Sequence record: NC_061451.1 | Length of the DNA stretch: 64,000 bases | Reading direction: 5' to 3' (one strand) | Shown here: piece by piece, positions 25,974 through 58,197 of the stretch | How the letters are laid out: every line of letters begins with the position of its first letter | Numbering within the stretch: position 1 is the first letter of the stretch | The notes under the pieces: generated by a model | Told to the model about the DNA's origin: nothing | Seen by the model: the letters and a program-made list of their open reading frames with translations, nothing else | Database searches by the model: none | Translations under genes and position numbers: made by a program

Positions 25974-27737
25974 TTAGAATGCCTTACGTTCAACATTCGA
26001 ATAGTACGTTTCGTACGGCTCAGAATACAACTCAGGACCGCGCTGCGCACGCACAGTAACATAGCCTGTATGGCGATTCACTGCGGTGATTTCGATAGTA
26101 GGCTGTTTAGGCTTAATCGTGCCGTAGATAGGCGCGTTCATCGTTGGTGGGTCTGTCTGAATCTTGTTTACAGATTGCAGTGCAGCACCAGACAGCGTAG
26201 GGAACTTAAAGCGCAATTCAGCACGCGTGCGGCCTGTAGCGATCTTGATGCTACCAGCAGGCAGTTCAACGCCGCTTTGTTTCAGGTAAGCAGCGATGCG
26301 ACGACCAATACCCGCTAATTGGTTCTTAGCGACAGGGTCCATCAGACCATCGAAGCTAATGGCTGATTGCGGTTGATTCACTGACAGATGCATACCCGTG
26401 TTGAAGTAGCCTTCTGCGAGAAAGCGATACAACTGACGAACAATCTCAGGAGTGTTCTGTGCAATCACAGGCGTCAACAACTCAGGTGGATTGGTCTTCA
26501 TCGGGTCGCGGTATTCAACCTGACCTTGTGAGTAACCCATACTGATATGCTTAACACGAGGATAAGCAGACTGCAACGAACCAGTAGAGCGAATCAGGAT
26601 AGAGCCAGACTTCGCTTGATCATACAGTTCATCGCTGGTGGTTGTTGAGAACAGGAAGTAGTCGGTAGGCACAGCCATACGACCGATAGCTTCGATTGCT
26701 TTCGTCTGCACTTCTTTGATCGTCGAACCAAACACTACGCGGCTACGATTCGGCTGAGCAGTAGACACAGCGAAGAATGCGCCGTACACTACCTTCTGGT
26801 CTTTGACGATAGGCGAAGCAGACTTAACCTTTTGACCGCCTGGCAGTGGAGGTAGCTTAACGCCCACCAGCTTGCCTTTAGTGATTGCTTTGTTCGCAAC
26901 AACAGGCTTCAAGGAGGACAGCAGCTTGTTCAACTCAGACCCGTCAAGAATCTTCTCCAGCGGAACAACGAGGTTCTGCGGCAGATAGTGTTTCTTGCGC
27001 AACGTATAGATAACGGTGTCTTTCTTGATCTGTAGAGGAGTAGCCATGTTACGACCAGCTTGACCAACAGGCTGGAACGTATTCGCTTTGTCCTGACCAA
27101 CAGAGCCGAACTCTTTGTCAAACACAGACTGACCGATGATGTTCGCTGCACGCAGATGGCCACGCACGTTGAACACAATCTTAGGTTCATCTTTCATGCG
27201 CAACTCATAGCGGTCACGCGTCAGATAGACCATGCTGAACTTGTCGCCTTTCTCCAGCTCAAGGTCATACTCATCGTTAGCGTCATCGATAACAACTTTC
27301 TTACCCTGATAGGTAGCGTACACGCGAGCGGCAGCAGACTCCGAAGCAATCTTCAACGCTACGCCACAGTTAGACAGCGCAGTAGCATAGTTGGTTGCGT
27401 GGAACAGCGCGTCGTTCGATTCCGTGATAGCGACTTCTTTACCGCGTACGCCCAGCGCAAGGTGGATAGCGCTAGAGCTGGACATGAACACAGTGTGACC
27501 TGTATCTTCATGCTTACCAGCAAAGGACATACCACTAACACGCGAAATAGACAGCGCATTTAGGTGTGGAGTAGTGAACGTATCACCCGCAGCAAAGTCA
27601 AAGATTTCACCTTGACGCCACGCGTAACCGATGTTGTTTGAACTCAAGCCAACAAACGCATCACCCACCTGTCGAATCGTAGTAGGGATAATGCTGAGAT
27701 CGCGAACGATCTGATTTTGTTTCTGAATGATGGTCAT
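25974..27737 (-). CDS. Hypothetical protein, putative internal head protein
   Basis: 587 aa; ASESAA motif followed by the ~65-aa domain shared with 40431..41108, 49036..50148 and 56251..58197. Confidence 0.6.
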   Translation of the reverse strand: MTIIQKQNQIVRDLSIIPTTIRQVGDAFVGLSSNNIGYAWRQGEIFDFAAGDTFTTPHLNALSISRVSGMSFAGKHEDTGHTVFMSSSSAIHLALGVRGKEVAITESNDALFHATNYATALSNCGVALKIASESAAARVYATYQGKKVVIDDANDEYDLELEKGDKFSMVYLTRDRYELRMKDEPKIVFNVRGHLRAANIIGQSVFDKEFGSVGQDKANTFQPVGQAGRNMATPLQIKKDTVIYTLRKKHYLPQNLVVPLEKILDGSELNKLLSSLKPVVANKAITKGKLVGVKLPPLPGGQKVKSASPIVKDQKVVYGAFFAVSTAQPNRSRVVFGSTIKEVQTKAIEAIGRMAVPTDYFLFSTTTSDELYDQAKSGSILIRSTGSLQSAYPRVKHISMGYSQGQVEYRDPMKTNPPELLTPVIAQNTPEIVRQLYRFLAEGYFNTGMHLSVNQPQSAISFDGLMDPVAKNQLAGIGRRIAAYLKQSGVELPAGSIKIATGRTRAELRFKFPTLSGAALQSVNKIQTDPPTMNAPIYGTIKPKQPTIEITAVNRHTGYVTVRAQRGPELYSEPYETYYSNVERKAF

Positions 27738-27745
27738 ATTGATCC

Positions 27746-28180
27746 CTAATACGAAACAAGGCGGAAGGCATTCTTCTTGAGAAGATTCAAATTGCCTAAC
27801 ATGAGACTGTAGGCCATTGTGCCGTGCTCTTTAATAAGCTCGTCAGGCACAAGTGAACCGAAATAAATTGAGCGGTCTGGACGTGAGTTAATCTCAACGC
27901 CACTGGACTTCATTGCATTCGGTACGATGAAGCACCAAGGCTCTGCAACGTACTTACCTTTCACATACTGAACTCTATAGCCAACGGCAACGCGCTGGCC
28001 TTTCGGCGGGCTGTATGAAAAGACATCCGTCTGCAATTCGAGGGCTTTCGACACGGAGAAAAGCGCCATAGTCAGAAAGCGTTGCTCGAATTGTGGAATG
28101 AATGCGTTGTCTTCGCATATCTTTTTCAGTACAGCCTCTTGCCGTGCTCGTGGGAACGAAGCGAAGAGGCTCAGGTTCAT
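27746..28180 (-). CDS. Hypothetical protein
   Basis: 144-aa ORF, ATGA overlap with tmk. Confidence 0.6.
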   Translation of the reverse strand: MNLSLFASFPRARQEAVLKKICEDNAFIPQFEQRFLTMALFSVSKALELQTDVFSYSPPKGQRVAVGYRVQYVKGKYVAEPWCFIVPNAMKSSGVEINSRPDRSIYFGSLVPDELIKEHGTMAYSLMLGNLNLLKKNAFRLVSY

Positions 28181-28800: not shown

Positions 28801-29292
28801 TTAGGCAAATCGCCCACCACGCCATGCGGCCTTGATGAGCAACTTAGCCACGATTTCGTTCTTCATTGTCTTTCGCTTTGCATTGCTACGGACAAATGCA
28901 GAGCCGAACTTATTCACGACAATCAAACCAACACCGCTCACGCGTATGCGTTCAATTATTCTATCGCCGTGAGATTCAAACAGGGCTTCGTCTATGGCAA
29001 AGTACATACGCATACAAAACGGTAGATACTTGTGCCACTTCTTATCAGTATTGAAATCGGCCCAGCAACTCTTAACCTCAGTGATAATCATATCGCATTT
29101 GGTATTAAGGCAGAACACGTCTGCTCTTAGGTTGCCTTGCTTAATCAAACCCAGCTCAACATGACAGGAATAACGTTTGTCAATCCAATAACGCTGAGCT
29201 GCCTCAGTGATAAACATAGTCCTATCAGGACGACTCATTGAGGTAAAGACTGCCTGTGTTTGACGTTCAGCTTTGCGGCGCTTAAAGGCCAT
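28801..29292 (-). CDS. mmcB: MmcB-family PD-(D/E)xK DNA repair nuclease
   Basis: RADVFCL...IITEVKSCWADFNTDKKWHKYLPFCMRMYFA. Confidence 0.8.
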   Translation of the reverse strand: MAFKRRKAERQTQAVFTSMSRPDRTMFITEAAQRYWIDKRYSCHVELGLIKQGNLRADVFCLNTKCDMIITEVKSCWADFNTDKKWHKYLPFCMRMYFAIDEALFESHGDRIIERIRVSGVGLIVVNKFGSAFVRSNAKRKTMKNEIVAKLLIKAAWRGGRFA

Positions 29293-29737
29293 ACGAGTCG
29301 ATAATGTCCAGCGCCTGAGCTAAAATTGGGCGGAGTTTCTTGTCCACCTTCTTTAGAGCTTTATCAGCACTGAACCACTTACGCTCACGCATGCCTGCTT
29401 CATCGTATTCAGTCAGTTCCTGCTTGACCTTCATGATGAACCATTCAACGTTCTGGGCGCGGCCGGTCTTGCCTTTAACATACTTCATAATGTCGATGAA
29501 GTCTTTAGGCTTACCGAGAATGCCGCCTTCTTCCATGGCTTCTTTAAGCGCGGAATCCAGTGGCGTCATACCTTTCTCAACGCCACCTTTAGGGAATCCC
29601 CAATTGTTTCCGTGTGTGGTGCGAATCAACAAGATCTGCACTTCACCTTTTTTCTTTTTGTATGGGACAACGCCTGACTGCTTACGCGCTTTCTTTTCAG
29701 AAGGCAGCTTAGCAGAGAGTGACACATTCAGCATCAT
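29282..29737 (-). CDS. Nudix hydrolase
   Basis: QSGVVPY...ILLI...WGFPKGGVEKGMTPLDSALKEAMEEGG (Nudix box with R to K), EAGMRERKWF. Confidence 0.9.
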   Translation of the reverse strand: MMLNVSLSAKLPSEKKARKQSGVVPYKKKKGEVQILLIRTTHGNNWGFPKGGVEKGMTPLDSALKEAMEEGGILGKPKDFIDIMKYVKGKTGRAQNVEWFIMKVKQELTEYDEAGMRERKWFSADKALKKVDKKLRPILAQALDIIDSYGL

Positions 29738-30272: not shown

Positions 30273-30273
30273 G

Positions 30274-39912: not shown

Positions 39913-40428
39913 TCAACTAAATTCAGGGATTTGGGCATCAAGTTGCATTTGCACTGACCATACACCACGGCCGCCTGTGCCGTTAAGTTGTATGCCTTGC
40001 CCACCCACTGGCCAACAGTTACGAAGCTGCATAGCGGCAACCATTTTTCCTTGGTTGTCGTACAGTTCAATGAACATATTCTTTTTATAAGCTGACGGTA
40101 AACGCATACCGCCTGTGTACGGATTCTGAATCAGGTTCTGCCACGCTGTGAAATATTTCATTACAGCAAGACGTTGGTCGACACCGAACATCAGATTGAA
40201 TCCGTCAATGCTGGAACCATGTGGCCAGTTAATTGCTACAGAGGCCACTTCTTTTGATTTAGACTGAAAGACAGAGAACGGCAAATCGACTTCTTCACAC
40301 GCAAAAGGACTGAGTGACACACCGCCCATTGTAGGAAACTCACGGATGCGCCACTTGTCCAGCATGAAGGGATCGTCTAAGCCAGGTGCAGATGTGTCTT
40401 GCAGGTCAGCAAGCGTCGGCAGCGGCAT
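39913..40428 (-). CDS. Tail tube-like protein (gp19-family paralogue)
   Basis: VMKYFTAWQNLIQNPYTG...YKKNMFIELYDNQG...LRNCWP pattern. Confidence 0.75.
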   Translation of the reverse strand: MPLPTLADLQDTSAPGLDDPFMLDKWRIREFPTMGGVSLSPFACEEVDLPFSVFQSKSKEVASVAINWPHGSSIDGFNLMFGVDQRLAVMKYFTAWQNLIQNPYTGGMRLPSAYKKNMFIELYDNQGKMVAAMQLRNCWPVGGQGIQLNGTGGRGVWSVQMQLDAQIPEFS

Positions 40429-40430
40429 GA

Positions 40431-41108
40431 TCAGTCCTCTACAATAATAAGCACAGGTCTAACAGCATCATCGAACTTGATGAACGCAGCGCCAACAAGA
40501 TAGCCACCCTTCTCTACTTGTTTCACGACAGCCTTTTCAAGATCTGTTTCCCACTTATCGCGCTGTGCGGGTTTGTAAGAAGCAAACGTCTCAGAAGCAT
40601 CGTAGTAGTTATAGGTACCACCAGTAGGCATTGGGATACGTGCAAGGAACTCTAAGCGACTACAGTTCTTGAACGGGGTCTTGCGTAGCTCTTGCGTCAG
40701 CTTGGTGTTCTCTGATTTAGAGCCAGGCACAGCGGTGAATACTTTCTTAGGCTGAGGCTCACGAGGAGCAGCAGGCATCTTCTCACGCGCTGGCGTATTC
40801 TTGTCGCTGGCTTTCTTAACACGAATACCAGAAACAGTCCCTGTGAATGGGCGACTGCGACCAAGCAACGAACGTGCGGCCGTAGCGTCAACAACAAACA
40901 CAACAGACGGGTCATCACGGTGCAGCACATAGAACTTGTTACGTGCAGCGGCCTTGATACCGAATACGTCTTTGTCCTCAATATCCGCTTCGTGTTCTTT
41001 GTTCTCGATACTGACCTTGCGCTTACCTTCAAAGCGATACCAGTCGCAGTCATTGATAGACACGATAGGTGTTTTGCGTGAAGCACTCTCGCTCAGAAAA
41101 ATAAGCAT
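40431..41108 (-). CDS. Hypothetical protein, putative internal head protein
   Basis: Starts MLIFLSESAS, followed by the shared ~65-aa domain. Confidence 0.6.
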   Translation of the reverse strand: MLIFLSESASRKTPIVSINDCDWYRFEGKRKVSIENKEHEADIEDKDVFGIKAAARNKFYVLHRDDPSVVFVVDATAARSLLGRSRPFTGTVSGIRVKKASDKNTPAREKMPAAPREPQPKKVFTAVPGSKSENTKLTQELRKTPFKNCSRLEFLARIPMPTGGTYNYYDASETFASYKPAQRDKWETDLEKAVVKQVEKGGYLVGAAFIKFDDAVRPVLIIVED

Positions 41109-41128
41109 GGTATCTCCAGGAAACGAGA

Positions 41129-44962: not shown

Positions 44963-46063
44963 TTAGCCGCGAACTGCTTTGGCAACGGAACGCACGTTCG
45001 CCAGAGTGAAGGAGAAGGTGCTTGACAGCAACCAGCCGCGGTCAGTGTTACCCTGGTTAGCACCAGAGGTAGGAGTAGACTGCGTACCGCCACGAGTGGT
45101 GTACACTGCATGGTAGTCCTGATCAGCCAGAACATACAGCTCGCCCTGTTTCAGAACGATGTGCTCTGGAGCACGCATACCATCGGTAACCAGCTCCATA
45201 CCCAGCAGGGTACCCAGACGACCGGTGATCAGCAAATCATACTTAGACACTGGGTCCAGAGCAGAAGAGAACTGATCGTTACCGATAATGTCGTTCCAGT
45301 AGTCCCACGCCATCACGGCGGTAGAGGTCGGCAGCGGCCATGAAGCAACGCTGTTTTTCAGGGTAGACAGCAGACGCGGAGTCAGGTCACCGTGAACGTA
45401 GGTGATCGGGTTAGCGATACCAACAGCTTCGTCACACGCTTGTTTCCACAGACGGTCTTCTGCAACCATGATAGAAGACAGGCCATCTTGCTGCGCACGG
45501 TCCAGCAGGTCGCCGTTGATCTGGTCCAGATCCATTTTGCTTACGCGGATGTTGGATTTCAGTTCAAACTCAGCCGGCTGGTAGGTACGGCCACGGAACT
45601 GGCGGTAACCGAAATCGGTAGGACCAGTTGCGATGATTGCTTCTGCCTGGTGAATTTTCAGTTCGATACGAGCAATGTCGCCCTGACGAACGGTAGCACC
45701 CTTACAGACTTTGCGCAGCAGACCAGCACGCTCAGCACGGTCTTCGATAGATGCAACGATAGAAGCACCCAGCGAGTCCCACTTAGCGCCAGAGGTATCA
45801 GCAGCAGCTTCGGCGAACAGTTCAATCTTCTCAGCTTCTGACAGACCGTTAGAAGCGTTAGACTGTGAATGAACCAGCTCACCATTTTGGAACGCGTTAG
45901 CCAGACGGCTGATCTGAGAGATCAGGTCTTTCTGGCTTGATGCGTTAATCTCACCAGTGCTTTGGCTCAGAGCTAATTCATTGCTCTTGCCGAAACGCAG
46001 GTCTTCAATCGGGGCGCCATTACGCAGAGTTACTTTCGCGCCGCGCATTAAGGAATTAGTCAT
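44963..46063 (-). CDS. Major capsid protein (HK97 fold, inferred)
   Basis: 366 aa downstream of protease, scaffold and decoration genes; highly biased codon use; strong RBS behind a hairpin; AEFELKSNIRVSKMDL...DGLSSIMVAEDR and GRLGTLLGMELVTD. Confidence 0.8.
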   Translation of the reverse strand: MTNSLMRGAKVTLRNGAPIEDLRFGKSNELALSQSTGEINASSQKDLISQISRLANAFQNGELVHSQSNASNGLSEAEKIELFAEAAADTSGAKWDSLGASIVASIEDRAERAGLLRKVCKGATVRQGDIARIELKIHQAEAIIATGPTDFGYRQFRGRTYQPAEFELKSNIRVSKMDLDQINGDLLDRAQQDGLSSIMVAEDRLWKQACDEAVGIANPITYVHGDLTPRLLSTLKNSVASWPLPTSTAVMAWDYWNDIIGNDQFSSALDPVSKYDLLITGRLGTLLGMELVTDGMRAPEHIVLKQGELYVLADQDYHAVYTTRGGTQSTPTSGANQGNTDRGWLLSSTFSFTLANVRSVAKAVRG

Positions 46064-46884: not shown

Positions 46885-48957
46885 TTATGAGCAGCGCAGA
46901 CGGGCCAGTTTATCTTCGAACGAGTCAGTGGAAGCTGAACTCTGTGATTGAATAGGTGCACTATCTTCGTCACCCAGAAGCTGCGCTGCAACGCTTGGTT
47001 GCTGCGGCTTAACAGGTGCGGTGACCTGCTGTTGAACTACAGGCTGAGCCTGCTGCACGGTACCGGCTGCGGCTTCGATTGACTGTGCAACTTCGTTCTG
47101 TGCAGTTTCAGACATAGACATAAGAGCCTGTGCTTTTGCCAGAGAAGTTGTCAGGAAATCTTTACCATGCGCGATAAACGCGTTTTGAATCAGCGCGTTC
47201 GGGTCTTTGATGCCTGCGGCAGACAGAGAGCGAACGAGAGAATCAACGATCGGGTTACGCACTTCACCCCAGTAGTTTTTGGTGATACCCAGCTGAGCAG
47301 AAGACAGGGCAGCAATCAAACGTTCCTGATGGGAAGCAACAGTGTCGTTGATAGTAGACGATACGCTGGTGGTAGCTTCGTTGATGCGAGCATCAGATTC
47401 AGCAACCAGCAATTTGTCTACAGGCATTTCGATTTGATACGGCATAAAGCCATACGCTTCGACTGTACCTACAACACCGCTTTGAACCAGGCTGTGTGAA
47501 ACGGCACGGATGAAATTATCAGTTGCGAAAGATTTACGCGCAACTTCTTCACCAACAACGTTAGACACAGAGTTGAACGTGGCGCGAGCAACTGGCTGGC
47601 CGTCGTAGTACATGTGTACCGATTCGACTTTACCGCCGTTAGAACGGCTGAGGCTTACCAGGGTCGGGTCCAGTTCGCCGTACTGAGCTTGTACGGTAGA
47701 CAGGCTGTCGAAGGTGCGATTAACGACTTTAGATTCAGAATCGAAGTCTTCATCGTCGAGGTCGAGATCATCTTCTTCCAGATCTTCGTCATCGTCGAGG
47801 TCTTCGTCGTCTTCATCGTCAGCGCCAGACTCAGAATCGAAATCTTCGTCTTCGTCGTCTTCGCCATCCAGATCGTCTTCATCCAGATCTTCGTCATCAT
47901 CGCCTGCACCAGATTCGGAGTCGAAATCTTCGTCTTCCAAATCTTCGTCATCTTCGAGGTCTTCCTCGTCTTCGTCGTCCAGATCATCTTCATCCAGATC
48001 TTCGTCGTCGAGGTCATCCTCTTCGTCTTCGTCGAAGTCATCTTCATCGAAGTCGTCTTCATCTTCATCACCATCAGATGATTCAGAATCAAAGTCGTCG
48101 TCAGAATCTTCGTCTTCGTCGTCGAGGTCCAGATCGTCTTCGTCCAGGATATCAATGTCGCTGTCGCTATCATCGTCACCGGAGTTAGATTCAATCGGCT
48201 CGTCGACCAGCGCCGCAGAGCAATGCGCACAGAAGACAGGCTCTTCATCGGAGCTTACAGTAAACGGCTGTTCGCATTTAGCGGAGCAGCTATAGATGTG
48301 AGCTTCGACGGTACCGTCAGCGGCAGCAGAAGACAGAGCAGTAACAGCTTCAGGAGCGTCCTGAGCGTCACAGCTATCAACAGCCTGGCCGGTGTACGGG
48401 TCGAATTTGGCAACAGTAGCAGCGTTGAAGCTACCAGTGTTGGACAGCGCTGTGAACGTTTGAGCACCAGACAGGGCCTGCGCGAAGTTGCGTTGAGCTT
48501 CTTCGGCAGTCTCGCCAGTAGCGATCAGGCTCGCGTGTTCAATCTGTTCATCAGCGTTTGCGCTCTCAGCAAGGAACTGTGATACGCGTTCATCAGTGAT
48601 TTCTGACAGGTCAGCAGAGCACGACGGGCAGCAGCCCTGAACGAGCGAAGCACTGTCGCTGATAACGTGGCTACCACAACCATCCAGACAGATAGTGTAA
48701 TGCGCCTTCACGTCACCAGCAGAAGACTGAGACTGAACTTCGGCTTTCTCAACCAAATCAGGATGCTCATCCAGCAGTTCGTTACCGCCGGTTGGGTTGT
48801 AGAGGTCAGCGCCACTTTGCGAAGCAAAGCCCACACCGTCAGAAGAACCATAAATCATTAAGTTCTGGCCTAACGCAGTGCGACGAAAGTTCTCTACTGC
48901 CTGATTATGGTTTTTACCGACACACAGGATACCCGCGAGTTGGGTAATCTTTGGCAT
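46885..48957 (-). CDS. Prohead core / scaffolding protein with long Asp/Glu tract
   Basis: ATG at 48957 with GAGG RBS; two Cys-rich knuckles, a ~150-aa acidic tract punctuated by FDSES, helical C-terminus. Confidence 0.7.
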   Translation of the reverse strand: MPKITQLAGILCVGKNHNQAVENFRRTALGQNLMIYGSSDGVGFASQSGADLYNPTGGNELLDEHPDLVEKAEVQSQSSAGDVKAHYTICLDGCGSHVISDSASLVQGCCPSCSADLSEITDERVSQFLAESANADEQIEHASLIATGETAEEAQRNFAQALSGAQTFTALSNTGSFNAATVAKFDPYTGQAVDSCDAQDAPEAVTALSSAAADGTVEAHIYSCSAKCEQPFTVSSDEEPVFCAHCSAALVDEPIESNSGDDDSDSDIDILDEDDLDLDDEDEDSDDDFDSESSDGDEDEDDFDEDDFDEDEEDDLDDEDLDEDDLDDEDEEDLEDDEDLEDEDFDSESGAGDDDEDLDEDDLDGEDDEDEDFDSESGADDEDDEDLDDDEDLEEDDLDLDDEDFDSESKVVNRTFDSLSTVQAQYGELDPTLVSLSRSNGGKVESVHMYYDGQPVARATFNSVSNVVGEEVARKSFATDNFIRAVSHSLVQSGVVGTVEAYGFMPYQIEMPVDKLLVAESDARINEATTSVSSTINDTVASHQERLIAALSSAQLGITKNYWGEVRNPIVDSLVRSLSAAGIKDPNALIQNAFIAHGKDFLTTSLAKAQALMSMSETAQNEVAQSIEAAAGTVQQAQPVVQQQVTAPVKPQQPSVAAQLLGDEDSAPIQSQSSASTDSFEDKLARLRCS
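47710..48190 (-). repeat. Asp/Glu low-complexity coding repeat with recurring FDSES units
   Basis: Degenerate (tcttcgtc/tcatc)n periodicity; encodes DEDFDSESGA...DLDEDDLD near-tandem units. Confidence 0.85.
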
Positions 48958-49002
48958 GGTTAAAACCCTCATAAGGAATGAAGTCGTTGAATCGACAGGT
49001 TG

Positions 49003-49035: not shown

Positions 49036-50148
49036 TTAGACTTTTCTGCTATCAATATCTGACTGAGGAATATAGCGATTTTCGAAGTATTTATTCACTA
49101 CTTCGACACCGTTTAGCGTATAAACGTTACGCAAACTATCTCCCCATACCATTAGTTCTGCCAGCGTTGCAAAGTGCTCCGTAGGCACGGATTTAATGGT
49201 CAGTGCATTGTTCGAATCAGGATGGATTCGCTTACCACGAATGGCCTGATCAAACTTCATACGGTCTACGTTACGCAGCATAGTATGGTCCACAAAGTGA
49301 GCCAATTCATGCGTCATAACATGGGCCATACTTTTGCTGTTATATCCACCCAGCAAACGAACAAGCTGTTGTGGACTAATAGCGATAACACCGTACATAA
49401 AACCACGAATCATGTACGTGCTAATGTGAGAACCGCCTACATCGTTACCTTCCTGCCCGCCCAGAATAGAAACGTACAGACGCTTAAACGGCAGATTAAC
49501 GTTCAGCCCTACAGCAGGCATTACGTTGTCCTGGATATCCTTTAGCACGAATGCTGGTGGACTAACACCGTTGACTGAGATGTTTAGGCCAGGGATATTC
49601 AGTTCATCTGCGCCACGCACTTCAAGATGTACCGTACCACATTTAGGCAGCGGTTGAATTGCGTAGTTGTTTGGCGTACCACCAGCATAAGCAATATCAG
49701 AGTATTGCAGAGGCGTAAATTTACCGAACTGAGGCCTGTCAAGTTCTCGACGTTGACGCGCTTCTTTGGACGCACGATCATCATCGATAGGAGTATCAAC
49801 AGGAGGTTTTGGCTCGGGTTCAGGCGGTGGGATTGGCACTTCGGCAGCGGCAGGCTTAGGCACTTTGACAGGCTTAGGCTTAGCAGACTTCTCCTCGAGT
49901 GGAGTAAAGTCAAAGCTATCAAACAACGCATCAGGCTGAGCAGCAAAAGGTCTGCTATTAGCCAGTATCATTCCAGCGCTCTCCCCGCTGATTGCAACAG
50001 CTTGAGGGTACTTAGGGTGAGCGATGTAATAGAGGTCATCGTTAACTTGATGGAGACCTACGACCTCGCGGGGCTGCATACGCACACCATTTGAAATCAT
50101 AGTATCTCCACCTAAGTAACGGACGAATTTGTAGTCCGTTATATCCAT
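49036..50148 (-). CDS. Zinc metallopeptidase-like protein (HExxH) with the shared N-terminal domain
   Basis: Start MDITDY at 50148 (TAATG coupling); Pro-rich linker; HVMTHELAHFVDH and downstream EHFATLAE. Confidence 0.7.
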   Translation of the reverse strand: MDITDYKFVRYLGGDTMISNGVRMQPREVVGLHQVNDDLYYIAHPKYPQAVAISGESAGMILANSRPFAAQPDALFDSFDFTPLEEKSAKPKPVKVPKPAAAEVPIPPPEPEPKPPVDTPIDDDRASKEARQRRELDRPQFGKFTPLQYSDIAYAGGTPNNYAIQPLPKCGTVHLEVRGADELNIPGLNISVNGVSPPAFVLKDIQDNVMPAVGLNVNLPFKRLYVSILGGQEGNDVGGSHISTYMIRGFMYGVIAISPQQLVRLLGGYNSKSMAHVMTHELAHFVDHTMLRNVDRMKFDQAIRGKRIHPDSNNALTIKSVPTEHFATLAELMVWGDSLRNVYTLNGVEVVNKYFENRYIPQSDIDSRKV

Positions 50149-50927
50149 TAACGCATCCGCAGCAGGTGTTCTTTGTACGTTGCAGCACAAGCAAACGCTG
50201 GGTCATCCACAGAGCTACACTCGAAACCAGTGAGGCCCTTACAATCACGATACACCAGGCGGCCTGTACGTGCATCCAAATACGTAGGCTTGTTGAACGC
50301 TGTATGCGAGCAGAAGTTACGATTCTTCGGTGTCACCATCTGACCACAGATACTGCATTTATAAGCACGGTAGGTTGTGCCCTTGCTGTACGTGTTCAGT
50401 TCACCGCTGAGAATACGGTCACAACGTTCCTTGCAGCGCGTGCGGTCAAACGCCAGCAACAGAGTCAGACGCGCATGATTGCCACGGAAGTTTTTCAGCT
50501 TAGACAGGTTCGAGTCAAAGATCATGCCCATTGCTTGGCGATAGTCTTTGTTGTTGTGCTCGATAAACGTCGGCTTACCAATGAACGTCTGATACGCAAG
50601 GCGTCCTTGATCAGGGTTAAACGTCAACCATTCCTGCAAGCTGAATGCATCACCGTTAGTGTTCGGCAGCTCCGTGATGTTTACCACAACAGGCGCAATG
50701 ATATAGTCACGGATATCACGCGAGGTGTTGTACATCTCAGCAGCTTTAGGCAGCCACACGTTAACGTCGAGGTTAAAAGATCCCGTCTCAATACCGAAAC
50801 GCGAAGCATCAACACGAATAGACTTAGCGTTTCGGCTAACATCTTCTTTGTGCATATCAATCGCGTTCAGTCCGACGAGGCCCATGTCTGAGGTATCAAA
50901 CGACTCAGACTTGATGAGCTGGGTCAT
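50148..50927 (-). CDS. Putative prohead (head maturation) protease
   Basis: FIGKPTFIEHN (His), YSKG (candidate catalytic Ser), CSICG...CSH zinc motif; upstream of scaffold and capsid genes. Confidence 0.7.
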   Translation of the reverse strand: MTQLIKSESFDTSDMGLVGLNAIDMHKEDVSRNAKSIRVDASRFGIETGSFNLDVNVWLPKAAEMYNTSRDIRDYIIAPVVVNITELPNTNGDAFSLQEWLTFNPDQGRLAYQTFIGKPTFIEHNNKDYRQAMGMIFDSNLSKLKNFRGNHARLTLLLAFDRTRCKERCDRILSGELNTYSKGTTYRAYKCSICGQMVTPKNRNFCSHTAFNKPTYLDARTGRLVYRDCKGLTGFECSSVDDPAFACAATYKEHLLRMR

Positions 50928-53335: not shown

Positions 53336-54244
53336 TTATACAAGAACGTTACCGCTATCCCACCACTTCTTGCCATAGATTTCGGACAGGCGGTAGTCAA
53401 GCACGATTGGTTGGTCAAGATCGACCTGAAGGATATCGCGACCTAGTGCAGCGCTATAAACTGTTTTCTCCTCAGTGTATACGCGTATCTCTAGTTCCAT
53501 GTCGCCTTGCGAATACTTGGGAACGAACGGCACATTCAGATCGCCATTGAACCCCTGACCGAGCGTATCGTCAAAGTAAGTAGACATACGAATCTCGGTG
53601 CCCTGATTGATAACTGTAGGTGCGTACACCGTGCGATTGTTATACGCCGTGTAGTCAGCTACCGTGGACTGTTGAATCAGGCGGCGCTTATAGATGCGCG
53701 TTACGCCTTTGTCGTCCACTACCGTACGATACTGATTGTAGAACCAGTTGATCTCATAGAACTTAACAGGCTTGAGGCCCGCAGATGAAACCAATGTCGC
53801 AGTCATACGGTGATAGGTCTTCTCCGTATTCAGACGGTAGAGCAGAATCTTAAACGCGTACCATTGGTAAACGTCTAACGTGATTGAGCCTGCATCTGAT
53901 TGCTGAGTACCGTTAGTGAGGATATACGAGAAGCAATCGCCACCAACGTAACCGCTACGGGGATCGTAAATGAACGCATCACTAAAGCTATTCAGTTCGA
54001 CAGTACCCAACAGTGGGTCGCTCACTTTGATTGCAGCAAGGCGCCAACCACGCTGGGCTGGAACCTTGTCGAGAACGCCTTCTGTGGGACTGTGACCTGT
54101 TAGCTCGTCGCGTGCGCCTTGCAGAATCTGATCGATAGTGATTTCAGTTTTACCTGAGTTCTTCACACGTATCGTTCTGTTTGGTGCTATTGGCTTATAG
54201 TTGCGCCAGTAGTCAAACGTACAAGGCAAAGAGAGCATAGTCAC
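53336..54244 (-). CDS. Virion protein with an Ig/cadherin-like domain
   Basis: P..GTVELNS..AFIYDPRSGYVGGDCFSYILTNG...GSITLDV. Confidence 0.6.
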   Translation of the reverse strand: MTMLSLPCTFDYWRNYKPIAPNRTIRVKNSGKTEITIDQILQGARDELTGHSPTEGVLDKVPAQRGWRLAAIKVSDPLLGTVELNSFSDAFIYDPRSGYVGGDCFSYILTNGTQQSDAGSITLDVYQWYAFKILLYRLNTEKTYHRMTATLVSSAGLKPVKFYEINWFYNQYRTVVDDKGVTRIYKRRLIQQSTVADYTAYNNRTVYAPTVINQGTEIRMSTYFDDTLGQGFNGDLNVPFVPKYSQGDMELEIRVYTEEKTVYSAALGRDILQVDLDQPIVLDYRLSEIYGKKWWDSGNVLV

Positions 54245-56211
54245 TCCAACTTATATTTACGTCGGAACTCTGCTAGACCCATGACAGGAATGCCTTTGTC
54301 CATGGCCTTCTGGAGTTTCGCAGAACCCGAGCCTGGGTCTTTGGCGATAAGAATGGTTGTATCTGCTTTCATGCTATCTGAGGCAGTACCACCAAGCTCA
54401 ACGATACGCTGCATCAGTTCACGATCACGAATGCCAGTGAATGCAACGTTAACGCCTTTCAGCTTAGAACTCTTCACCTGAACGCGCTTCGGTGCCACCA
54501 GCTTAACACCGATTTCATTCGCAAGCTGATACGCAGAGACACACGCAAGAGCAATGTCAGGTGATTTCGTTTTGATGCCGTGAATATCCGAGATAGCTTT
54601 AGCGAGCGCCAGAGGATTCTGTTTGCGCACTAGCTTGTCAAGGTCAGGCACGCTATCGACCACTTTATCAAACGTAGTGTTAGCGCCTCGCATGAAGTAC
54701 GGCGAGCACGCTTTAAGCCACGTATTGACAGCAACGCTTGAGCGTAATGCTTTGAGGTCTTTCGCAAGCTGAGCGCCACGCGAGTCACCAACCACTTCAC
54801 GCAGCACACTGATAGATGCAGCAAACAAACGGGCAGGCGTATCAATGCCAGACTCTACGAGCAGCTTCGACGTACTCGGTCCTGTGTTAGCAACATCCAA
54901 TCCTTTGAGGAATGAACTGAGCAGTCGAGTAGTGCCTACCTCAGTCTTGGTATTGATAACGAACTCAACGCCATTGACTTTGTATGGCACATCAGGCAGC
55001 TTTGGCTTCTTCGCAGGCTTGAGAATCTCCATGATGTATGGGATTACCTTACCGCTACGAATCAGCTTAACGGTAGCACCTGGGCCAAGAGGTTTCTTAG
55101 CGTGAGGTGCAGTCGCTTTGCCTTTAGGCTTGAGATAGCCGTGCTCAACATAGAATCCATTGTGACCATTAGCACGCTGCACAGTGACGCCGCCCGTCAT
55201 CAACGTCGGTGGGAAGATGATAACAGGCTGCAAGATACCGTACTTGGTTTCTTGGTAGATAACATCCTCTACCTTAACTATCACTGTGTCAGCTTCTGCA
55301 TTCATTTTAAACTTGAATGCGTGCTTTGGATTGGATGCAGTCGCTTTAGGGCTTGGTACATCTTCCGTGAGTACAACACCATCCAGCTCGTAGATAGCTT
55401 TAGACAGACGGCGCTCCAAGAACGCGATCAACTCATCTTCTGAATTGAAGCGCTTTGGTGGCGTATGCCTAACAACTTCGAATCCCCAGCGCTCCAGCAG
55501 GGCGAACTGCTTAGACTGTTTGAGTGTAGCACCATCACCGCCGATGATAGAAAAGCACACCATGCGGACGTACTTGAACTCGGATGCTGTTTCGAAGTTA
55601 CGCACAAGTCCCGACGCAGCGTTACGCGCAGCCTTGAAGCGACCACCAGCAGACTCATGCATCTTAGCCATGAATGTCTTTTGAGGAATGAGTGCCTCAA
55701 AGCGCAACACCGTCTGACCTCTGACTGGAATCTTTTTAGGGATTTTCATCGCAGGGATATGATGGGATACGTCTTTACCGTGAGTAGCATCACCACGAGT
55801 GTACGCCTTTACAGGGACACCGTCTTGATACACAATCTCAAGGCTCAAGCCATCGAGCTTGTCGGTTGCAACGTAGTCCACATCTTTCGACAGTGCTTTG
55901 GCAATCTGCTTCGAGCCAGCCTGAAACTGATTGAGACTTGCCATAGGTACAGGCAGCTTAACATCAGCATCATCACGCTGGCCAATCTTACGAGCCAGCT
56001 TCGACTTAGGCCATTTAGCGTCGATGTAGTTACGAATTGAATCGTACACTGCATCGCTCACCAGACCTTCATCATCCGTATGATATGCGTTGTCCAGAGC
56101 GGTTATTAAGTTACGCACTTGCGTCTGGTTCAAGGTGTCCAAGACCTTTTGAGGGTTCTTGGACAGTTGCTTGAGACTAACAGAGGCAGAAATAGAAAGC
56201 CTTACTTTCAT
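54241..56211 (-). CDS. ligA: NAD+-dependent DNA ligase
   Basis: Domain Ia YH...SDAVYD, KxDG motif TDKLDG, YTRGD, ELDGVV, AFKF, RANGHN, IRSGKVIP, HhH and C-terminal BRCT (AFTG.RD); no four-Cys zinc finger seen. Confidence 0.93.
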   Translation of the reverse strand: MKVRLSISASVSLKQLSKNPQKVLDTLNQTQVRNLITALDNAYHTDDEGLVSDAVYDSIRNYIDAKWPKSKLARKIGQRDDADVKLPVPMASLNQFQAGSKQIAKALSKDVDYVATDKLDGLSLEIVYQDGVPVKAYTRGDATHGKDVSHHIPAMKIPKKIPVRGQTVLRFEALIPQKTFMAKMHESAGGRFKAARNAASGLVRNFETASEFKYVRMVCFSIIGGDGATLKQSKQFALLERWGFEVVRHTPPKRFNSEDELIAFLERRLSKAIYELDGVVLTEDVPSPKATASNPKHAFKFKMNAEADTVIVKVEDVIYQETKYGILQPVIIFPPTLMTGGVTVQRANGHNGFYVEHGYLKPKGKATAPHAKKPLGPGATVKLIRSGKVIPYIMEILKPAKKPKLPDVPYKVNGVEFVINTKTEVGTTRLLSSFLKGLDVANTGPSTSKLLVESGIDTPARLFAASISVLREVVGDSRGAQLAKDLKALRSSVAVNTWLKACSPYFMRGANTTFDKVVDSVPDLDKLVRKQNPLALAKAISDIHGIKTKSPDIALACVSAYQLANEIGVKLVAPKRVQVKSSKLKGVNVAFTGIRDRELMQRIVELGGTASDSMKADTTILIAKDPGSGSAKLQKAMDKGIPVMGLAEFRRKYKLE

Positions 56212-56250
56212 GCTTTTCTCCGATCGACATTAACACTCTTGTTTACAGTG

Positions 56251-58197
56251 TTATGATGCGATAGGGTCCTTGTTGACCTCGTAATCTTCCGCCATGTCGT
56301 ACACGCGATTGAACAGCTTAGGCGCCATATCTTTCACATGCTCGGCATAGTCAAACAGGTTCTGCTTACGCGCACGATTGACACGTACCTGACGTACTTC
56401 GTCTGGGCTATTCGTAATGTCGTACAGCGTATACACAACGATGTTATCGGAGGAATTATGGGTGCTTACTTTGAGGACTACCCAATCGCGTTGCAGCTTA
56501 GCATCAGCCTTGAAGCGGAGGACGTCGCCCTCTTCGGCTTCATCTGCACGCGCATCAGGAGTAGACTTGTTAGTTGCGGCAATCTTCTTCGCAGTTTCAG
56601 CAGCTTCTTTCTCTGCCTCAGCCACATCAGAATCTTGGTCTTCATCCGCTTCTGTTTCGTCTACGGCGTCAGAGGTATCGTCAGCGGAGTCGTCGGCTTC
56701 TTCGTCGTCATCTCCAGACGTATCTTCCTCGTCATCTCCTCCGTCGTCGGCATCATCAGATTCCACATCGGAGTCGTCATCTGAATCGTCGGAGCTATCA
56801 TCCCCATCCTCATCATCAGACTCTGAATCGCTATCGTCAGCATCTTCTTCTGCATCTGAATCGTCCTCTTCCGTTTCGTCGTCTGGGTCAACGTCACCGC
56901 CTTCAGGGTCATCCTCTTCCAGCTCGGAGTCATCGTCGAGGTTAGCCTCTTCTGAGTCGTCTGGCTCATCATCCTTGGTTGAGTTCTTAGCAGAGCCGCC
57001 TTTCTTGCGAACCTTAGACTTAGGAGCAACTTCCTCTTCGTCATCATCTGGCTCATCAATGTCAGACAGGTCAAGCTCGGAATCGACTTCGTTGTCCGCG
57101 CTATCGTCACCACCGAACATAGAGCTAACGGTGTCTTCCAGACTGAACACATCACCTGCAAACGGGCTACGTTGAAGAATGTCTTCAAGGCGTTGCTCAT
57201 CGAGGTCCTGCTCAAGGTCCAGATGTTCTTCGATAGCATCATCGAGGTTTTCATGCTCAATGACTTTAGGCAGACGACGACGATCATTCAGGCCAGGGTC
57301 ATCAGAGTAGATGGTACGCTGAGGTCCTGTAGGCGCTTCAATCTCACCGTCACGCACTTTGCGTCTGAGGTCACGCATCTCTGCGCTACGCTCACGAGCT
57401 TTCTTACGTGCTTCCTGTGCGAGTTCCTTGCGCTGTTGTTTGCGCTCAAGGGCAGATGCCTCACGACCTAAACGTTCAGCTTCCTCAAGTTCACGGCCTT
57501 CGCGATGGCGAGCGCGACGAACCATACGACGATACTGTTTGATAGTATCAACATCAACACTACCAACAGGCCAGTCATTAAGAGGCAGAATGTTTGTGTC
57601 ATGCACAATCAGATCGTACTGGGCGTCATCGACTTTCAGGAACAGGCCTTCTGTGTTGATAACGATACCGCCTTTACCTTGACGCAAGAAACGCACGCCA
57701 ATCATATCGTTGCGGTACATCTTATAAATACCCTTTGTGGTCTTCACAGGATATTCATTGCCCGGCACCATGCGCCATTGATAGTTGGCAAAGTCAACGC
57801 CATACACAGCTTCTGACTTAACCGATTTCGGCATAAAGCGAGGAGCATCAAACAGGGTACGATTGATCTTACGCTCAAGGCTCTTAGCGCCCGCAACGCG
57901 TGCAGTAGTACCAGCCTCACGTTTAACCACAGCTGGTGGCTTACGCAACTTAGAGCTACGTTCAATGAGGAACAGACCTGTCGTTTTGTCGAGAGGGAAA
58001 TCGACGTGCGGCATATCTGGGAAAATCAGTGTATAACGACCACCATTCCTGAGTGGCAGAATACCAAAAGTGTCGCCATTACGAATCATACGTTTGTGTG
58101 ATCGCTGCGTCACCTCTCGTCCACGTGAACCAGTAAACTGCATCCACGCGTACTTCGATACGGCATCTTCATATGATGCGGATTCGGAGAGTACCAT
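56251..58197 (-). CDS. Large hypothetical protein with acidic tract, putative internal head protein
   Basis: Starts MVLSESAS, two copies of the shared domain, charged coiled coil, ~170-aa Asp/Glu tract. Confidence 0.65.
   Translation of the reverse strand: MVLSESASYEDAVSKYAWMQFTGSRGREVTQRSHKRMIRNGDTFGILPLRNGGRYTLIFPDMPHVDFPLDKTTGLFLIERSSKLRKPPAVVKREAGTTARVAGAKSLERKINRTLFDAPRFMPKSVKSEAVYGVDFANYQWRMVPGNEYPVKTTKGIYKMYRNDMIGVRFLRQGKGGIVINTEGLFLKVDDAQYDLIVHDTNILPLNDWPVGSVDVDTIKQYRRMVRRARHREGRELEEAERLGREASALERKQQRKELAQEARKKARERSAEMRDLRRKVRDGEIEAPTGPQRTIYSDDPGLNDRRRLPKVIEHENLDDAIEEHLDLEQDLDEQRLEDILQRSPFAGDVFSLEDTVSSMFGGDDSADNEVDSELDLSDIDEPDDDEEEVAPKSKVRKKGGSAKNSTKDDEPDDSEEANLDDDSELEEDDPEGGDVDPDDETEEDDSDAEEDADDSDSESDDEDGDDSSDDSDDDSDVESDDADDGGDDEEDTSGDDDEEADDSADDTSDAVDETEADEDQDSDVAEAEKEAAETAKKIAATNKSTPDARADEAEEGDVLRFKADAKLQRDWVVLKVSTHNSSDNIVVYTLYDITNSPDEVRQVRVNRARKQNLFDYAEHVKDMAPKLFNRVYDMAEDYEVNKDPIAS
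56600..57110 (-). repeat. Asp/Glu/Ser low-complexity coding tract
   Basis: Degenerate triplet periodicity (tcatc/tcgtc) encoding DDSDSESDDEDGDDSSDD... Confidence 0.8.

What the first reader, a model, noticed from the sequence alone, without database searches (positions are those of the whole stretch)
25974..58197. A ~65-aa paralogous domain at the front of four unrelated proteins, three times directly after SESA
Seen: the pattern 'Y/W-x-x-F/Y-x-G ... i-x-x-gD-x-fgi ... Y-x-l-x-x-x-d-x-P-x-v-x-F-x-v/l ... ll-x-x-S' occurs in 40431..41108 (about 41048-40854: DWYRFEG...KDVFGI...FYVLHRDDPSVVFVVD...LLGRS), in 56251..58197 (about 58152-57955: AWMQFTG...GDTFGI...YTLIFPDMPHVDFPLD...LIERS, plus a weaker second copy), in 25974..27737 (about 27323-27126: YATYQG...GDKFSM...YELRMKDEPKIVFNV...IIGQS) and in 49036..50148 (about 50139-49957: FVRYLGG...REVVGL...YYIAHPKYPQAVAI...ILANS). 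The C-terminal parts differ (metallopeptidase, acidic tract, unknown domains). Inference: a modular targeting or docking domain fused to different cargoes, for example for head incorporation.
Basis: partly seen in the sequence, partly recalled or inferred. Interest (0 to 1): 0.7.

Follow-up and report, generated by a model that had tools for sequence, protein, structure and literature searches.

The report
SH3-like KMPT-N module behind processing leader
Four proteins of an Erwinia jumbo phage do share a real 65-residue domain, but it is already catalogued (Pfam KMPT-N); the 'SESA' in front of it belongs to a wider N-terminal leader that probably marks proteins for trimming by the head protease and packaging into the capsid.

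Summary
The window is Erwinia phage pEa_SNUABM_7 (Snuvirus; Lu11/PaBG/Y3 jumbo-phage group). gp123, gp141, gp150 and gp157 each match Pfam PF20294 (KMPT-N) at E 1e-17 to 1e-20, at the stated coordinates. Orthologues support the weak second copy in gp157. No other copy exists in the 265-kb genome. An AlphaFold model (pLDDT 89) shows an SH3-like beta-barrel, tethered to unrelated C-terminal parts by disordered linkers that are Pro/Lys-rich in gp141 and gp150.

The new point concerns SESA. Across 83 family representatives, 75% carry [S/A]-x-[S/A]-A a few residues before the domain (control 5%). The same leader heads at least 10 proteins in this genome that lack the domain: Alt-like ADP-ribosyltransferase, NAD ligase, Nudix, giant helicase and others. 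A similar motif lies in the variable segment at about residues 60-80 of the major capsid protein in six of seven relatives; in PaBG it ends at residue 71, matching the reported ~20% maturation loss. It also separates modules in Tad6 (anti-Thoeris)-KMPT-N polyproteins.

SESA is therefore most likely a prohead-protease or capsid-targeting signal. KMPT-N is most likely a docking adaptor that stays on the mature cargo. Virion location and cleavage are inferred, not shown.

The parts
40431..41108 (-). gp141 (225 aa): leader MLIFLSESAS + KMPT-N + Pro/Lys-rich linker + ~95-aa alpha/beta C-terminal domain of unknown family
41082..41093 (-). SESA of the gp141 leader (residues 6-9)
40854..41048 (-). KMPT-N domain of gp141 (Pfam residues 21-85; the modelled SH3-like barrel spans about 20-97)
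56251..58197 (-). gp157 (648 aa): leader MVLSESAS + KMPT-N + diverged second KMPT-N + basic helical stretch + ~230-aa acidic tract + C-terminal domain
58177..58188 (-). SESA of the gp157 leader (residues 4-7)
57955..58152 (-). KMPT-N copy 1 of gp157 (residues 16-81)
57658..57801 (-). Diverged KMPT-N copy 2 of gp157 (residues 133-180)
   Evidence: domain E 0.0055; orthologous second copies are significant
25974..27737 (-). gp123 (587 aa): ~130-aa N-terminal region, internal SESA, KMPT-N, ~380-aa C-terminal part
27333..27344 (-). Internal SESA of gp123 (residues 132-135), four residues before the domain
27126..27323 (-). KMPT-N domain of gp123 (residues 139-204)
49036..50148 (-). gp150 (370 aa from ATG w50148): KMPT-N without leader + Pro-rich linker + zincin-like HExxH metallopeptidase. 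The annotated start at w50100 truncates the domain.
49954..50139 (-). KMPT-N domain of gp150 (residues 4-65)
50148..50927 (-). gp151 head maturation protease (phrog_18299), immediately upstream of gp150; its own N-terminus reads MTQLIKSESF
44963..46063 (-). gp147 major capsid protein. Candidate maturation site S-Q-S-N at residues 66-69 (w45857-45868), in the variable segment before the conserved core.
54241..56211 (-). gp156 NAD-dependent DNA ligase carrying the same leader (MKVRLSISAS, w56182-56211) but no KMPT-N
29282..29737 (-). gp127 Nudix hydrolase with leader MMLNVSLSAK (w29708-29737), no KMPT-N
46885..48972 (-). gp149, an acidic protein annotated 'ATPase' that lies two genes upstream of the major capsid gene, with seven S-[EQ]-S motifs. 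Candidate scaffold/core protein cleaved at several sites.

Best explanation
The repeated segment is the Pfam domain KMPT-N (PF20294). It is a ~70-80-residue SH3-like beta-barrel that, among the isolated phages searched, was found only in the Lu11/PaBG/Y3/Alexandra ('Lupandier') group of jumbo phages, plus metagenomic contigs, those examined being syntenic with that group.

It is one half of a two-part N-terminal module.

(1) A linear leader, consensus M-phi-phi-S-x-S-A (locally SESA), is the recognition and cleavage motif of the prohead maturation protease (gp151). It probably doubles as a capsid-targeting signal, in the manner of the T4 CTS. This leader also works on its own, on many proteins that lack the domain.

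(2) KMPT-N follows 4-9 residues later and has no second site behind it. It therefore becomes the new N-terminus of the mature protein. There it acts as a protein-protein (possibly DNA) docking adaptor. It holds flexibly tethered cargo to an internal head component until the cargo leaves with the DNA. The cargoes here are a zincin peptidase, an acidic-tract protein and unknown domains; elsewhere they include SprT-like peptidases, Tad6, a peroxiredoxin/thioredoxin and a weak SAP match.

Shown: domain identity, fold class, modular architecture, the statistical coupling of leader and domain, and the wider distribution of the leader.

Inferred: cleavage at the leader, presence of the carriers in the head, and the docking role.

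Sub-confidences: domain = KMPT-N, 0.97. Leader = protease or packaging signal, about 0.6. Domain = docking adaptor retained on internal or ejected head proteins, about 0.35-0.4. The overall confidence given is for the whole mechanism taken together.
For: Domain and fold:
- Pfam hits for all four proteins and for 83/83 representatives.
- AF2 model with an 84-row alignment: pLDDT 89, barrel residues ~20-97 at pLDDT >95, leader residues 1-10 at pLDDT 54, linker residues 100-130 at pLDDT ~60-68.
- SH3 and SH3b are the best structural matches: Foldseek probability 0.97 with TM 0.5 by target; VIA-align Z 6.6 to the SH3b domain of 2evr.

Coupling of leader and domain:
- [S/A]-x-[S/A]-[ASV] occurs within -22 to -6 of the conserved Trp in 59/79 representatives, against 5% of control windows. 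The strict S-x-S form occurs in 51/83 against 1.9%. This holds for internal copies too (gp123 orthologues, P0049, P0063, P0064, P0068).

Leader without the domain in the same genome:
- gp127 Nudix, gp156 ligase, gp183 helicase, gp191, gp208, gp209 Alt-like ADP-ribosyltransferase, gp253, and gp180/198/199.
- 21 N-terminal motif hits against 4.4 +/- 2.1 in shuffles.

Protease-site character:
- S-[EQ]-S is enriched: 59 observed against 37 +/- 5.5. It clusters in the N-terminal parts of the MCP, the portal, the protease and gp149.
- A [S/A]-x-[S/A]-small motif lies in the variable MCP segment (about residues 60-80) in 6 of 7 related phages.
- In PaBG the motif ends at residue 71, which matches the reported ~20% mass loss of its MCP on maturation (PMC7412058).
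- The motifs also separate modules in polyproteins: leader-Tad6-SVS(S/A)-KMPT-N.

Link to virions:
- PaBG virion bands gp202 (helicase-like, N-terminus ...LNSLSAA) and gp83 (MLIKINLLEAVAAKA, like gp198/199/180) carry such leaders (PMC7412058 Table 1).

Other context:
- No conserved second site follows the domain, and disordered linkers follow it, Pro/Lys-rich in gp141 and gp150.
- gp150 sits directly downstream of the protease gene.
Against: - No proteomic or N-terminal sequencing datum shows cleavage at the motif, or shows a KMPT-N carrier in a virion. PaBG's three carriers (gp89, gp107, gp217) are not among its 14 Coomassie-visible bands (PMC7412058).
- gp150 and PaBG gp107 have the domain without any leader.
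- The MCP motif is degenerate and is absent in one of seven relatives, L016.
- The exact scissile bond is unknown.
- gp141 lies between two tail-tube paralogues. Its C-terminal domain gives weak (Z ~5) matches to collar and terminator proteins, so it could be a neck or tail protein.
- SH3-like barrels are generic, and the structural scores are in the range that unrelated models also reach (note).
- The leader sits on enzymes (ligase, Nudix, topoisomerase in PaBG) that are not classical head proteins.
Confidence: 0.4

Rival explanations
1. One reading: the KMPT-N domain itself is the capsid-targeting element. It binds the scaffold/core or the portal during prohead assembly. The SESA leader is only a trimming site, or is incidental.
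For: The domain is fused to many unrelated cargoes. It is N-terminal in nearly all cases. gp150 and PaBG gp107 have the domain but no leader, so the domain can stand alone. The SH3-like fold is a typical protein-binding module. Giant-phage head proteins are known to use long N-terminal targeting regions (PMC5694885).
Against: At least 10 proteins in the same genome carry the leader without the domain, including homologues of proven virion proteins. Something other than the domain must therefore be able to do the targeting. The domain is not removed, since no second site follows it, unlike T4 or SPN3US targeting propeptides. There are no virion data for any carrier.
Confidence: 0.25
2. KMPT-N is a substrate-presentation (exosite) module. 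It binds the maturation protease gp151, or the zincin gp150, and positions the adjacent S-x-S-A site for cleavage.
For: Spacing between motif and domain is constant and short, at N-terminal and internal positions alike. gp150 (KMPT-N + peptidase) is encoded next to gp151.
Against: Leader-only substrates exist in numbers, so no exosite is needed. The MCP and portal motifs have no such domain nearby. The coupling could simply reflect inheritance of leader+domain as one duplicated unit.
Confidence: 0.1
3. KMPT-N acts in the host cell after ejection, or after ordinary intracellular expression. It would be a targeting domain that brings effector cargo to a host protein, the envelope or nucleic acid. 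It would have no role in head assembly.
For: Partners include host-directed functions: the Tad6 Thoeris inhibitor and SprT-like peptidases, which Iyer et al. propose target host proteins (PMC7824862). The domain is on average basic, net +3.6. Bacterial SH3b domains bind cell-wall or protein ligands.
Against: The two largest carrier families (gp141-like, 21 clusters; gp157-like, 22 clusters) are conserved, syntenic core genes in structural neighbourhoods, not variable accessory effectors. In the Tad6 proteins a predicted cleavage site separates Tad6 from KMPT-N, so KMPT-N would not stay with that cargo.
Confidence: 0.15
4. The leader is not a protease or packaging signal at all. It could be a beta-strand-addition motif or another N-terminal tag. 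The carriers would be non-virion or tail/neck proteins, and the motif enrichment would reflect shared ancestry of N-termini.
For: gp141 lies between tail-tube genes, and its C-terminal domain weakly resembles collar/terminator folds. Several leader-bearing proteins are replication or repair enzymes. Cleavage has never been observed.
Against: The motif also occurs internally: at the variable N-terminal segment of the MCP, in gp123, and between polyprotein modules. Two leader-bearing PaBG proteins are in virions (PMC7412058). The leaders sit on otherwise unrelated proteins, so common ancestry of whole N-termini is unlikely.
Confidence: 0.15

Closest known systems
Pfam PF20294 KMPT-N ('KTSC and Metallopeptidase N-terminal fusion domain')
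   Same: All four window proteins match it above threshold. The location is N-terminal. One partner (gp150) is a metallopeptidase, and SprT-like partners occur in relatives.
   Different: The Pfam entry records only the fusion pattern. I found no paper on it in the searched library. Its fold class, its leader and its link to head maturation are not part of the entry's name. gp141's C-terminal domain is not detectably KTSC.
T4 capsid targeting sequence (CTS) of the internal proteins IPI-III and Alt, removed by gp21
   Same: A short conserved N-terminal peptide ending in a protease motif, on several unrelated proteins. These include an Alt-like ADP-ribosyltransferase (gp209) whose leader is nearly identical to that of its neighbour gp208 (MELMVSLSAK / MELLVSLSAR).
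   Different: The motif is built of small residues ([S/A]-x-[S/A]-A) and not L/I-x-E. The peptide before it can be only 3-6 residues. A folded SH3-like domain follows in a subset. Packaging and cleavage are untested here.
Long N-terminal propeptides and paralogue families of phiKZ/SPN3US head ejection proteins (PF12699 family; PMC5694885)
   Same: A giant-phage setting: multiple paralogous N-terminal regions on head proteins, processed by a T4 gp21-type prohead protease.
   Different: No PF12699 match was found. Those propeptides (~125 aa) are cut off at A/S/G-x-E, whereas KMPT-N appears to be retained. This is a different phage lineage, with no virion RNA polymerase or chimallin evidence.
MuF / SPP1 gp7-type head proteins with variable C-terminal toxin or effector domains
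   Same: A conserved N-terminal head-association module, with polymorphic C-terminal cargo delivered with the DNA.
   Different: Unrelated sequence and fold. No Phage_Mu_F match was found in the four carriers or the 83 representatives.
Bacterial SH3b / SH3-like small barrels (e.g. the N-terminal domain of NlpC/P60 endopeptidase 2evr, and FeoA)
   Same: Best structural matches to the modelled domain (Z 6.6, 4.5).
   Different: No sequence relationship, and the scores are within the range of chance fold resemblance.

Membership tests
Pfam PF20294 KMPT-N | Profile match above the gathering score (28.9 bits) | tested here: met
   68.4, 62.9, 71.2 and 73.0 bits for gp141, gp157, gp123 and gp150
Pfam PF20294 KMPT-N | Fusion N-terminal to a metallopeptidase or a KTSC domain | tested here: inconclusive
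   gp150 has HExxH and zincin-like features. SprT-like partners occur in 7 representatives. No KTSC (PF13619) hit in gp141-like C-termini even at E<=5. gp123 and gp157 have other partners.
SH3-like small beta-barrel fold | Five- to six-stranded barrel superposable on SH3 / SH3b | tested here: met
   AF2 pLDDT >95 over the domain. Foldseek SH3 hits: probability 0.97, TM ~0.5 by target. VIA-align Z 6.6 / 5.1 / 4.6 to SH3b / SH3. The scores are modest.
T4-type capsid targeting sequence | N-terminal peptide ending at a prohead-protease cleavage site shared with the capsid protein | tested here: inconclusive
   Motif shared with the variable MCP segment at ~residues 60-80 in 6/7 relatives, and with portal and protease N-termini. 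Cleavage itself was not observed.
T4-type capsid targeting sequence | Cleavage consensus L/I-x-E | tested here: not met
   The motif is [S/A]-x-[S/A]-A. The middle residue is E only in this phage, and I/L/T/Q/H elsewhere.
T4-type capsid targeting sequence | Carriers are in the head, and the peptide suffices to package foreign proteins | not testable with these tools
   Indirect only: leader-bearing PaBG gp202 and gp83 are virion bands (PMC7412058).
phiKZ/SPN3US head paralogue family A (PF12699) | PF12699 match | tested here: not met
   No such hit.
MuF/gp7 polymorphic head proteins | Phage_Mu_F (PF04233) N-terminal domain | tested here: not met
   No such hit.

The most novel reading that the evidence does not exclude
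Lupandier-group jumbo phages may use a capsid-loading code of their own. A minimal leader M-phi-phi-[S/A]-x-[S/A]-A, read by the prohead protease, would mark 15 or more proteins per genome for packaging and co-injection with the DNA. Candidates are an Alt-like ADP-ribosyltransferase, NAD ligase, Nudix, a 215-kDa helicase, zincin and SprT peptidases and, in relatives, Tad6 anti-Thoeris polyproteins. The SH3-like KMPT-N domain would be a dedicated adaptor that tethers a subset of these to an internal head structure. This would be a second, sequence-unrelated, T4-CTS-like system. It would also be a natural example of pre-packaged anti-defence proteins released from a polyprotein inside the capsid.
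Probability: 0.35. Interest if true: 0.7.

Novelty: new variant of a known kind. Interest (0 to 1): 0.5.

Why it matters
The domain itself is not new: it has a Pfam entry, and UniProt already names the Y3, Yoloswag and PaBG proteins after it. It had no fold class, no context and no function that I could find.

Its obligatory link to a short leader suggests how this large, poorly studied jumbo-phage lineage loads its capsid with enzymes and anti-defence proteins. The leader also heads many enzymes, and it resembles the motif in the variable N-terminal segment of the capsid protein.

If confirmed, three things follow:
- A simple sequence rule for predicting the injected proteome of these phages.
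- A small tag for packaging foreign proteins into them, as the CTS provides for T4.
- An explanation of how Tad6-type inhibitors could act before any phage gene is expressed.

These phages are also used as fire-blight biocontrol agents, so knowing what they inject is of practical interest.

Tried and rejected
- A single-sequence AF2 model of gp141 was useless (pLDDT 44). It was replaced by the alignment-based model.
- Foldseek against PDB and AFDB clusters gave no match at E<=0.001. Only generic SH3 hits appeared.
- I tested whether the ~130-aa N-terminal region of gp123 is a further degenerate KMPT-N copy. hhalign gave probability 0.3%, so the idea is rejected.
- I tested whether gp123 is a diverged homologue of the syntenic Tad6-KMPT-N protein P0063. 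BLASTP gave E 0.46, so there is no support.
- I looked for KTSC in the gp141-like C-termini and found no Pfam hit at E<=5.
- I searched for virion proteomics of close relatives. The Y3 paper is not held. The Dickeya AD1/JA paper has no proteome. The PaBG gel proteome lists 14 bands, none of them a KMPT-N carrier.
- Literature searches for 'KMPT-N', 'PF20294' and 'KTSC domain' returned nothing relevant.
- The 281-aa L008 protein with leader MKITLVSTSV is not the protease.
- I looked for strict covariation of the middle residue between the KMPT-N leaders and the MCP site of the same phage. It matches exactly only in L008 (SLSA/SLSA). Elsewhere only the small-residue pattern is shared.
- Read laying and sequencing-run tools were not used, because expression data would not settle cleavage or packaging.

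Full report
**Identity of the window.** The window is bases 62,001-126,000 of Erwinia phage pEa_SNUABM_7 (NC_061451.1, 265,635 bp, genus Snuvirus), matched at 100% identity. Its relatives are the Erwinia phages Y3, Alexandra and Yoloswag, Dickeya AD1/JA11, Yersinia fHe-Yen9-02, phage NCTB and, more distantly, Pseudomonas Lu11 and PaBG. The PaBG authors call this the 'Lupandier' group (PMC7412058). The four ORFs of the finding are gp123, gp141, gp150 and gp157. All lie in the long minus-strand block that holds the structural genes.

**The observation.** The four segments are only about 25% identical to each other. The curated Pfam model PF20294, 'KMPT-N, KTSC and Metallopeptidase N-terminal fusion domain', nevertheless hits all four at E 3e-17 to 2e-20, well above its cut-off. 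The similarity is therefore real, and the family is already catalogued.

A profile scan of all six reading frames of the complete genome finds exactly these four carriers. The 'weaker second copy' in gp157 (residues 133-180) is marginal here (domain E 0.0055). It lies at the position where orthologues have a clearly significant second copy: 1e-6 to 4e-8 in P0013, P0021, P0022 and P0044, and it is also detected in PaBG gp217 and Lu11 gp078. I accept it as a diverged copy.

The RefSeq start of gp150 removes the first 16 residues of the domain. The ATG at w50148 overlaps the stop of the protease gene and restores a full domain.

**Fold.** A single-sequence model failed. With an 84-row alignment of family members, AlphaFold gave pLDDT 89 for gp141:
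- The leader (residues 1-10) is disordered (pLDDT 54).
- Residues ~20-97 form a compact six-stranded barrel with one helix and three short strands (pLDDT >95).
- Residues 100-130 are a low-confidence Pro/Lys-rich linker.
- Residues 132-225 are a separate alpha/beta domain.

The barrel's best structural neighbours are SH3 and bacterial SH3b domains: Foldseek probability 0.97 with TM ~0.5 by target, and VIA-align Z 6.6 to the SH3b domain of 2evr, plus FeoA and other SH3 entries. The scores are modest. I take 'SH3-like small barrel' as a fold class and not as evidence of homology. In the viral structure library the significant hits are KMPT-N proteins of Y3, Yoloswag, PaBG and Lu11.

**Distribution and partners.** A profile search of 1.84 billion representative proteins found 85 clusters. 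83 were scanned against Pfam and all contain PF20294. The domain begins within the first ~30 residues in most of them.

The parts outside the domain fall into 29 sequence clusters:
- gp157-like: 22 clusters.
- gp141-like: 21 clusters.
- SprT-like metallopeptidases: 7 clusters.
- gp123-like: 6 clusters.
- The remainder are small groups and singletons.

Named partners are SprT-like (7 members), the type I Thoeris inhibitor Tad6 (3), a peroxiredoxin/thioredoxin (1) and a weak SAP match (1).

Among isolated phages the domain was found only in the Lupandier group. gp141-like and gp157-like genes are syntenic core genes there. gp141-like genes lie next to tail-tube genes in four metagenomic contigs. 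gp157-like genes lie upstream of the NAD ligase in Lu11 and PaBG.

**What SESA is.** I aligned the 24 residues before the conserved Trp in all representatives. This shows a leader of the form M-phi-phi-S-x-S-A, for example MLISISA, MLLSLSA, MFISISA and MLSESA. A motif [S/A]-x-[S/A]-[ASV] is present at -22 to -6 in 59 of 79 sequences, against 5% of control windows. The strict S-x-S form is present in 51 of 83, against 1.9%. Internal copies have it as well: gp123 and its six orthologue clusters, and P0049, P0063, P0064 and P0068. SESA is therefore the local spelling of a family-wide motif whose middle residue is free.

The motif is not tied to the domain. In this genome the same N-terminal leader heads these proteins:
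- gp127 Nudix hydrolase (MMLNVSLSAK).
- gp156 NAD-dependent DNA ligase (MKVRLSISAS; ligase domains confirmed).
- gp183, the 1,944-residue helicase-like protein (MMNQIISTSA).
- gp191.
- gp208 (MELLVSLSAR).
- gp209 (MELMVSLSAK), an Alt-like RNA-polymerase ADP-ribosyltransferase.
- gp253 (MKIFVSLSAP).
- The paralogues gp180, gp198 and gp199 (MSLIK-I/L-N ... SESA).

There are 21 N-terminal motif hits, against 4.4 +/- 2.1 in shuffled N-termini. SESA itself occurs 9 times against 1.8 +/- 1.3. S-[EQ]-S occurs 59 times against 37 +/- 5.5. It is concentrated in the N-terminal parts of the major capsid protein (two sites), the portal (two sites) and the protease (KSESF at residues 6-10), and in the acidic protein gp149 two genes upstream of the capsid gene (seven sites).

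**Evidence that the motif is a maturation-protease site.**
- Capsid proteins of seven related phages align well, except for a variable stretch at about residues 60-80. That stretch holds a small-residue motif in six of them: S-Q-S-N here, S-L-S-A in contig L008 (whose KMPT-N leader is MLLSLSA), A-T-A-S in Lu11 (leader MIISLAAA), A-P-S-A in PaBG, S-V-S-S in L013 and A-P-A-T in L015. L016 has none.
- In PaBG the motif ends at residue 71 of 368. The authors report that the capsid protein loses about 20% of its mass on maturation (PMC7412058). The two figures agree.
- In the Tad6-KMPT-N proteins, repeated S-V-S-(S/A) motifs bracket the modules: leader, Tad6, KMPT-N, C-terminal part. This is the layout of a polyprotein.
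- Two PaBG proteins identified in purified virions carry such leaders. They are the 221-kDa helicase-like gp202 (...LNSLSAA) and gp83 (MLIKINLLEAVAAKA, the same type as gp198/199/180 here) (PMC7412058 Table 1).

None of this shows cleavage directly. I also cannot say whether the cut falls after the second Ser or after the Ala.

**Consequence for the domain.** No conserved second motif follows KMPT-N in any of the four proteins, and a disordered linker (Pro/Lys-rich in gp141 and gp150) comes next. After trimming, the mature protein would therefore start with the SH3-like barrel and carry its cargo on a flexible tether. That is the anatomy of a docking adaptor and not of a removable targeting propeptide.

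Many proteins have the leader alone, so the leader is the more economical candidate for the processing or packaging signal. The domain would add a second function for a subset. Most likely that function is anchoring to an internal head component. The domain is on average basic (net +3.6, range -5 to +10), so anchoring to DNA is also possible. What it binds is unknown.

gp150 and PaBG gp107 have the domain without a leader.

**Weak points.**
- No KMPT-N carrier has been seen in a virion. PaBG's carriers gp89, gp107 and gp217 are not among its 14 gel bands, although that survey saw only abundant proteins.
- gp141 lies between two tail-tube paralogues, and its C-terminal domain gives weak collar/terminator-like matches (Z ~5, noise range). 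It may be a neck or tail protein.
- Several leader-bearing proteins are replication or repair enzymes. Giant phages do package enzymes, but for these proteins it is an inference.

**Comparison with known systems.** The closest functional analogue is the T4 capsid targeting sequence, carried by the internal proteins and Alt and removed by gp21 (summarised in PMC5694885). The Alt-like gp209 and its neighbour gp208 have near-identical leaders, a striking parallel to the conserved T4 CTSs. The differences are these:
- The motif is built of small residues, not L/I-x-E.
- The peptide ahead of it is very short.
- A folded SH3-like module follows it in a subset of carriers.

The phiKZ/SPN3US head paralogue family (PF12699, ~125-residue propeptides cut at A/S/G-x-E) and the MuF/gp7 polymorphic head proteins are conceptual relatives. 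Their defining domains are absent here. Iyer et al. noted SprT-like and other zincin peptidases in jumbo phages but did not describe this module (PMC7824862). I found no paper mentioning KMPT-N or PF20294.

**Verdict.** The domain is modular, and it is probably associated with head-internal or ejected proteins.

I rate the finding of moderate interest (0.5), as a new variant of the CTS-type capsid-loading theme. The decisive experiments are virion N-terminomics and reporter packaging.

Noticed in passing
window 50100-50148 (gp150 start): The RefSeq CDS for gp150 starts at w50100 and cuts off the first 16 residues of the KMPT-N domain. The ATG at w50148, which overlaps the stop codon of the protease gene gp151, gives a complete domain.
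   Followed up: yes
window 54241-56211 (gp156) and 29282-29737 (gp127); outside the window, record 148774-154608 (gp183), 160292-161581 (gp191), 173925-174930 (gp208, gp209), 207043-207702 (gp253): An NAD-dependent DNA ligase, a Nudix hydrolase, a 1,944-aa helicase-like protein, an Alt-like ADP-ribosyltransferase and others begin with the same M-phi-phi-S-x-S-A leader as the KMPT-N proteins but lack the domain. gp208 and gp209 have almost identical leaders.
   Followed up: partly
window 46885-48972 (gp149): This protein lies two genes upstream of the major capsid gene. It is annotated 'ATPase' here and '60S ribosomal-like protein' in PaBG. It has no Pfam domain, a long acidic region with four DFDSES repeats, and seven S-[EQ]-S motifs. 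It looks like a scaffold/core protein cut at several sites.
   Followed up: partly
record 146664-147911, 166356-167477, 167488-168489 (gp180, gp198, gp199); PaBG L011:14999-15961 (gp83): Three paralogues share the N-terminus MSLIK(I/L)N...SESA. PaBG gp83, a protein identified in PaBG virions, starts MLIKINLLEAVAAKA. This looks like a second, longer leader type.
   Followed up: partly
P0063, P0068, P0008 (metagenomic relatives); L017:2945-4678: These polyprotein-like genes have the layout leader - Tad6 (type I Thoeris inhibitor) - S-V-S-(S/A) motifs - KMPT-N - C-terminal part. P0063 lies just after MmcB-like and thymidylate kinase genes, at about the position (thymidylate kinase is two genes upstream) that gp123 holds in this phage. 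No sequence similarity between gp123 and P0063 was detectable outside the KMPT-N domain.
   Followed up: partly
window 56251-57300 (C-terminal half of gp157): A ~230-residue tract made almost entirely of Asp/Glu/Ser follows a basic helical stretch. It could be DNA-mimicking or charge-balancing. The gene is conserved upstream of the ligase gene in Lu11 and PaBG.
   Followed up: no
window 39913-41669 (gp140-gp142): gp141 sits between two tail-tube-like genes, an arrangement also seen in contigs L008, L015 and L016. Its C-terminal alpha/beta domain gives only noise-level matches to sheath collar and tail terminator proteins.
   Followed up: partly
record 5351-5569 (gp005, between terminase and portal): This 72-aa ORF is annotated 'DNA ligase' and contains K-S-Q-S-S near its N-terminus. 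The annotation looks doubtful. In PaBG the gene between the portal and the terminase is the gp141-like KMPT-N protein gp107.
   Followed up: no
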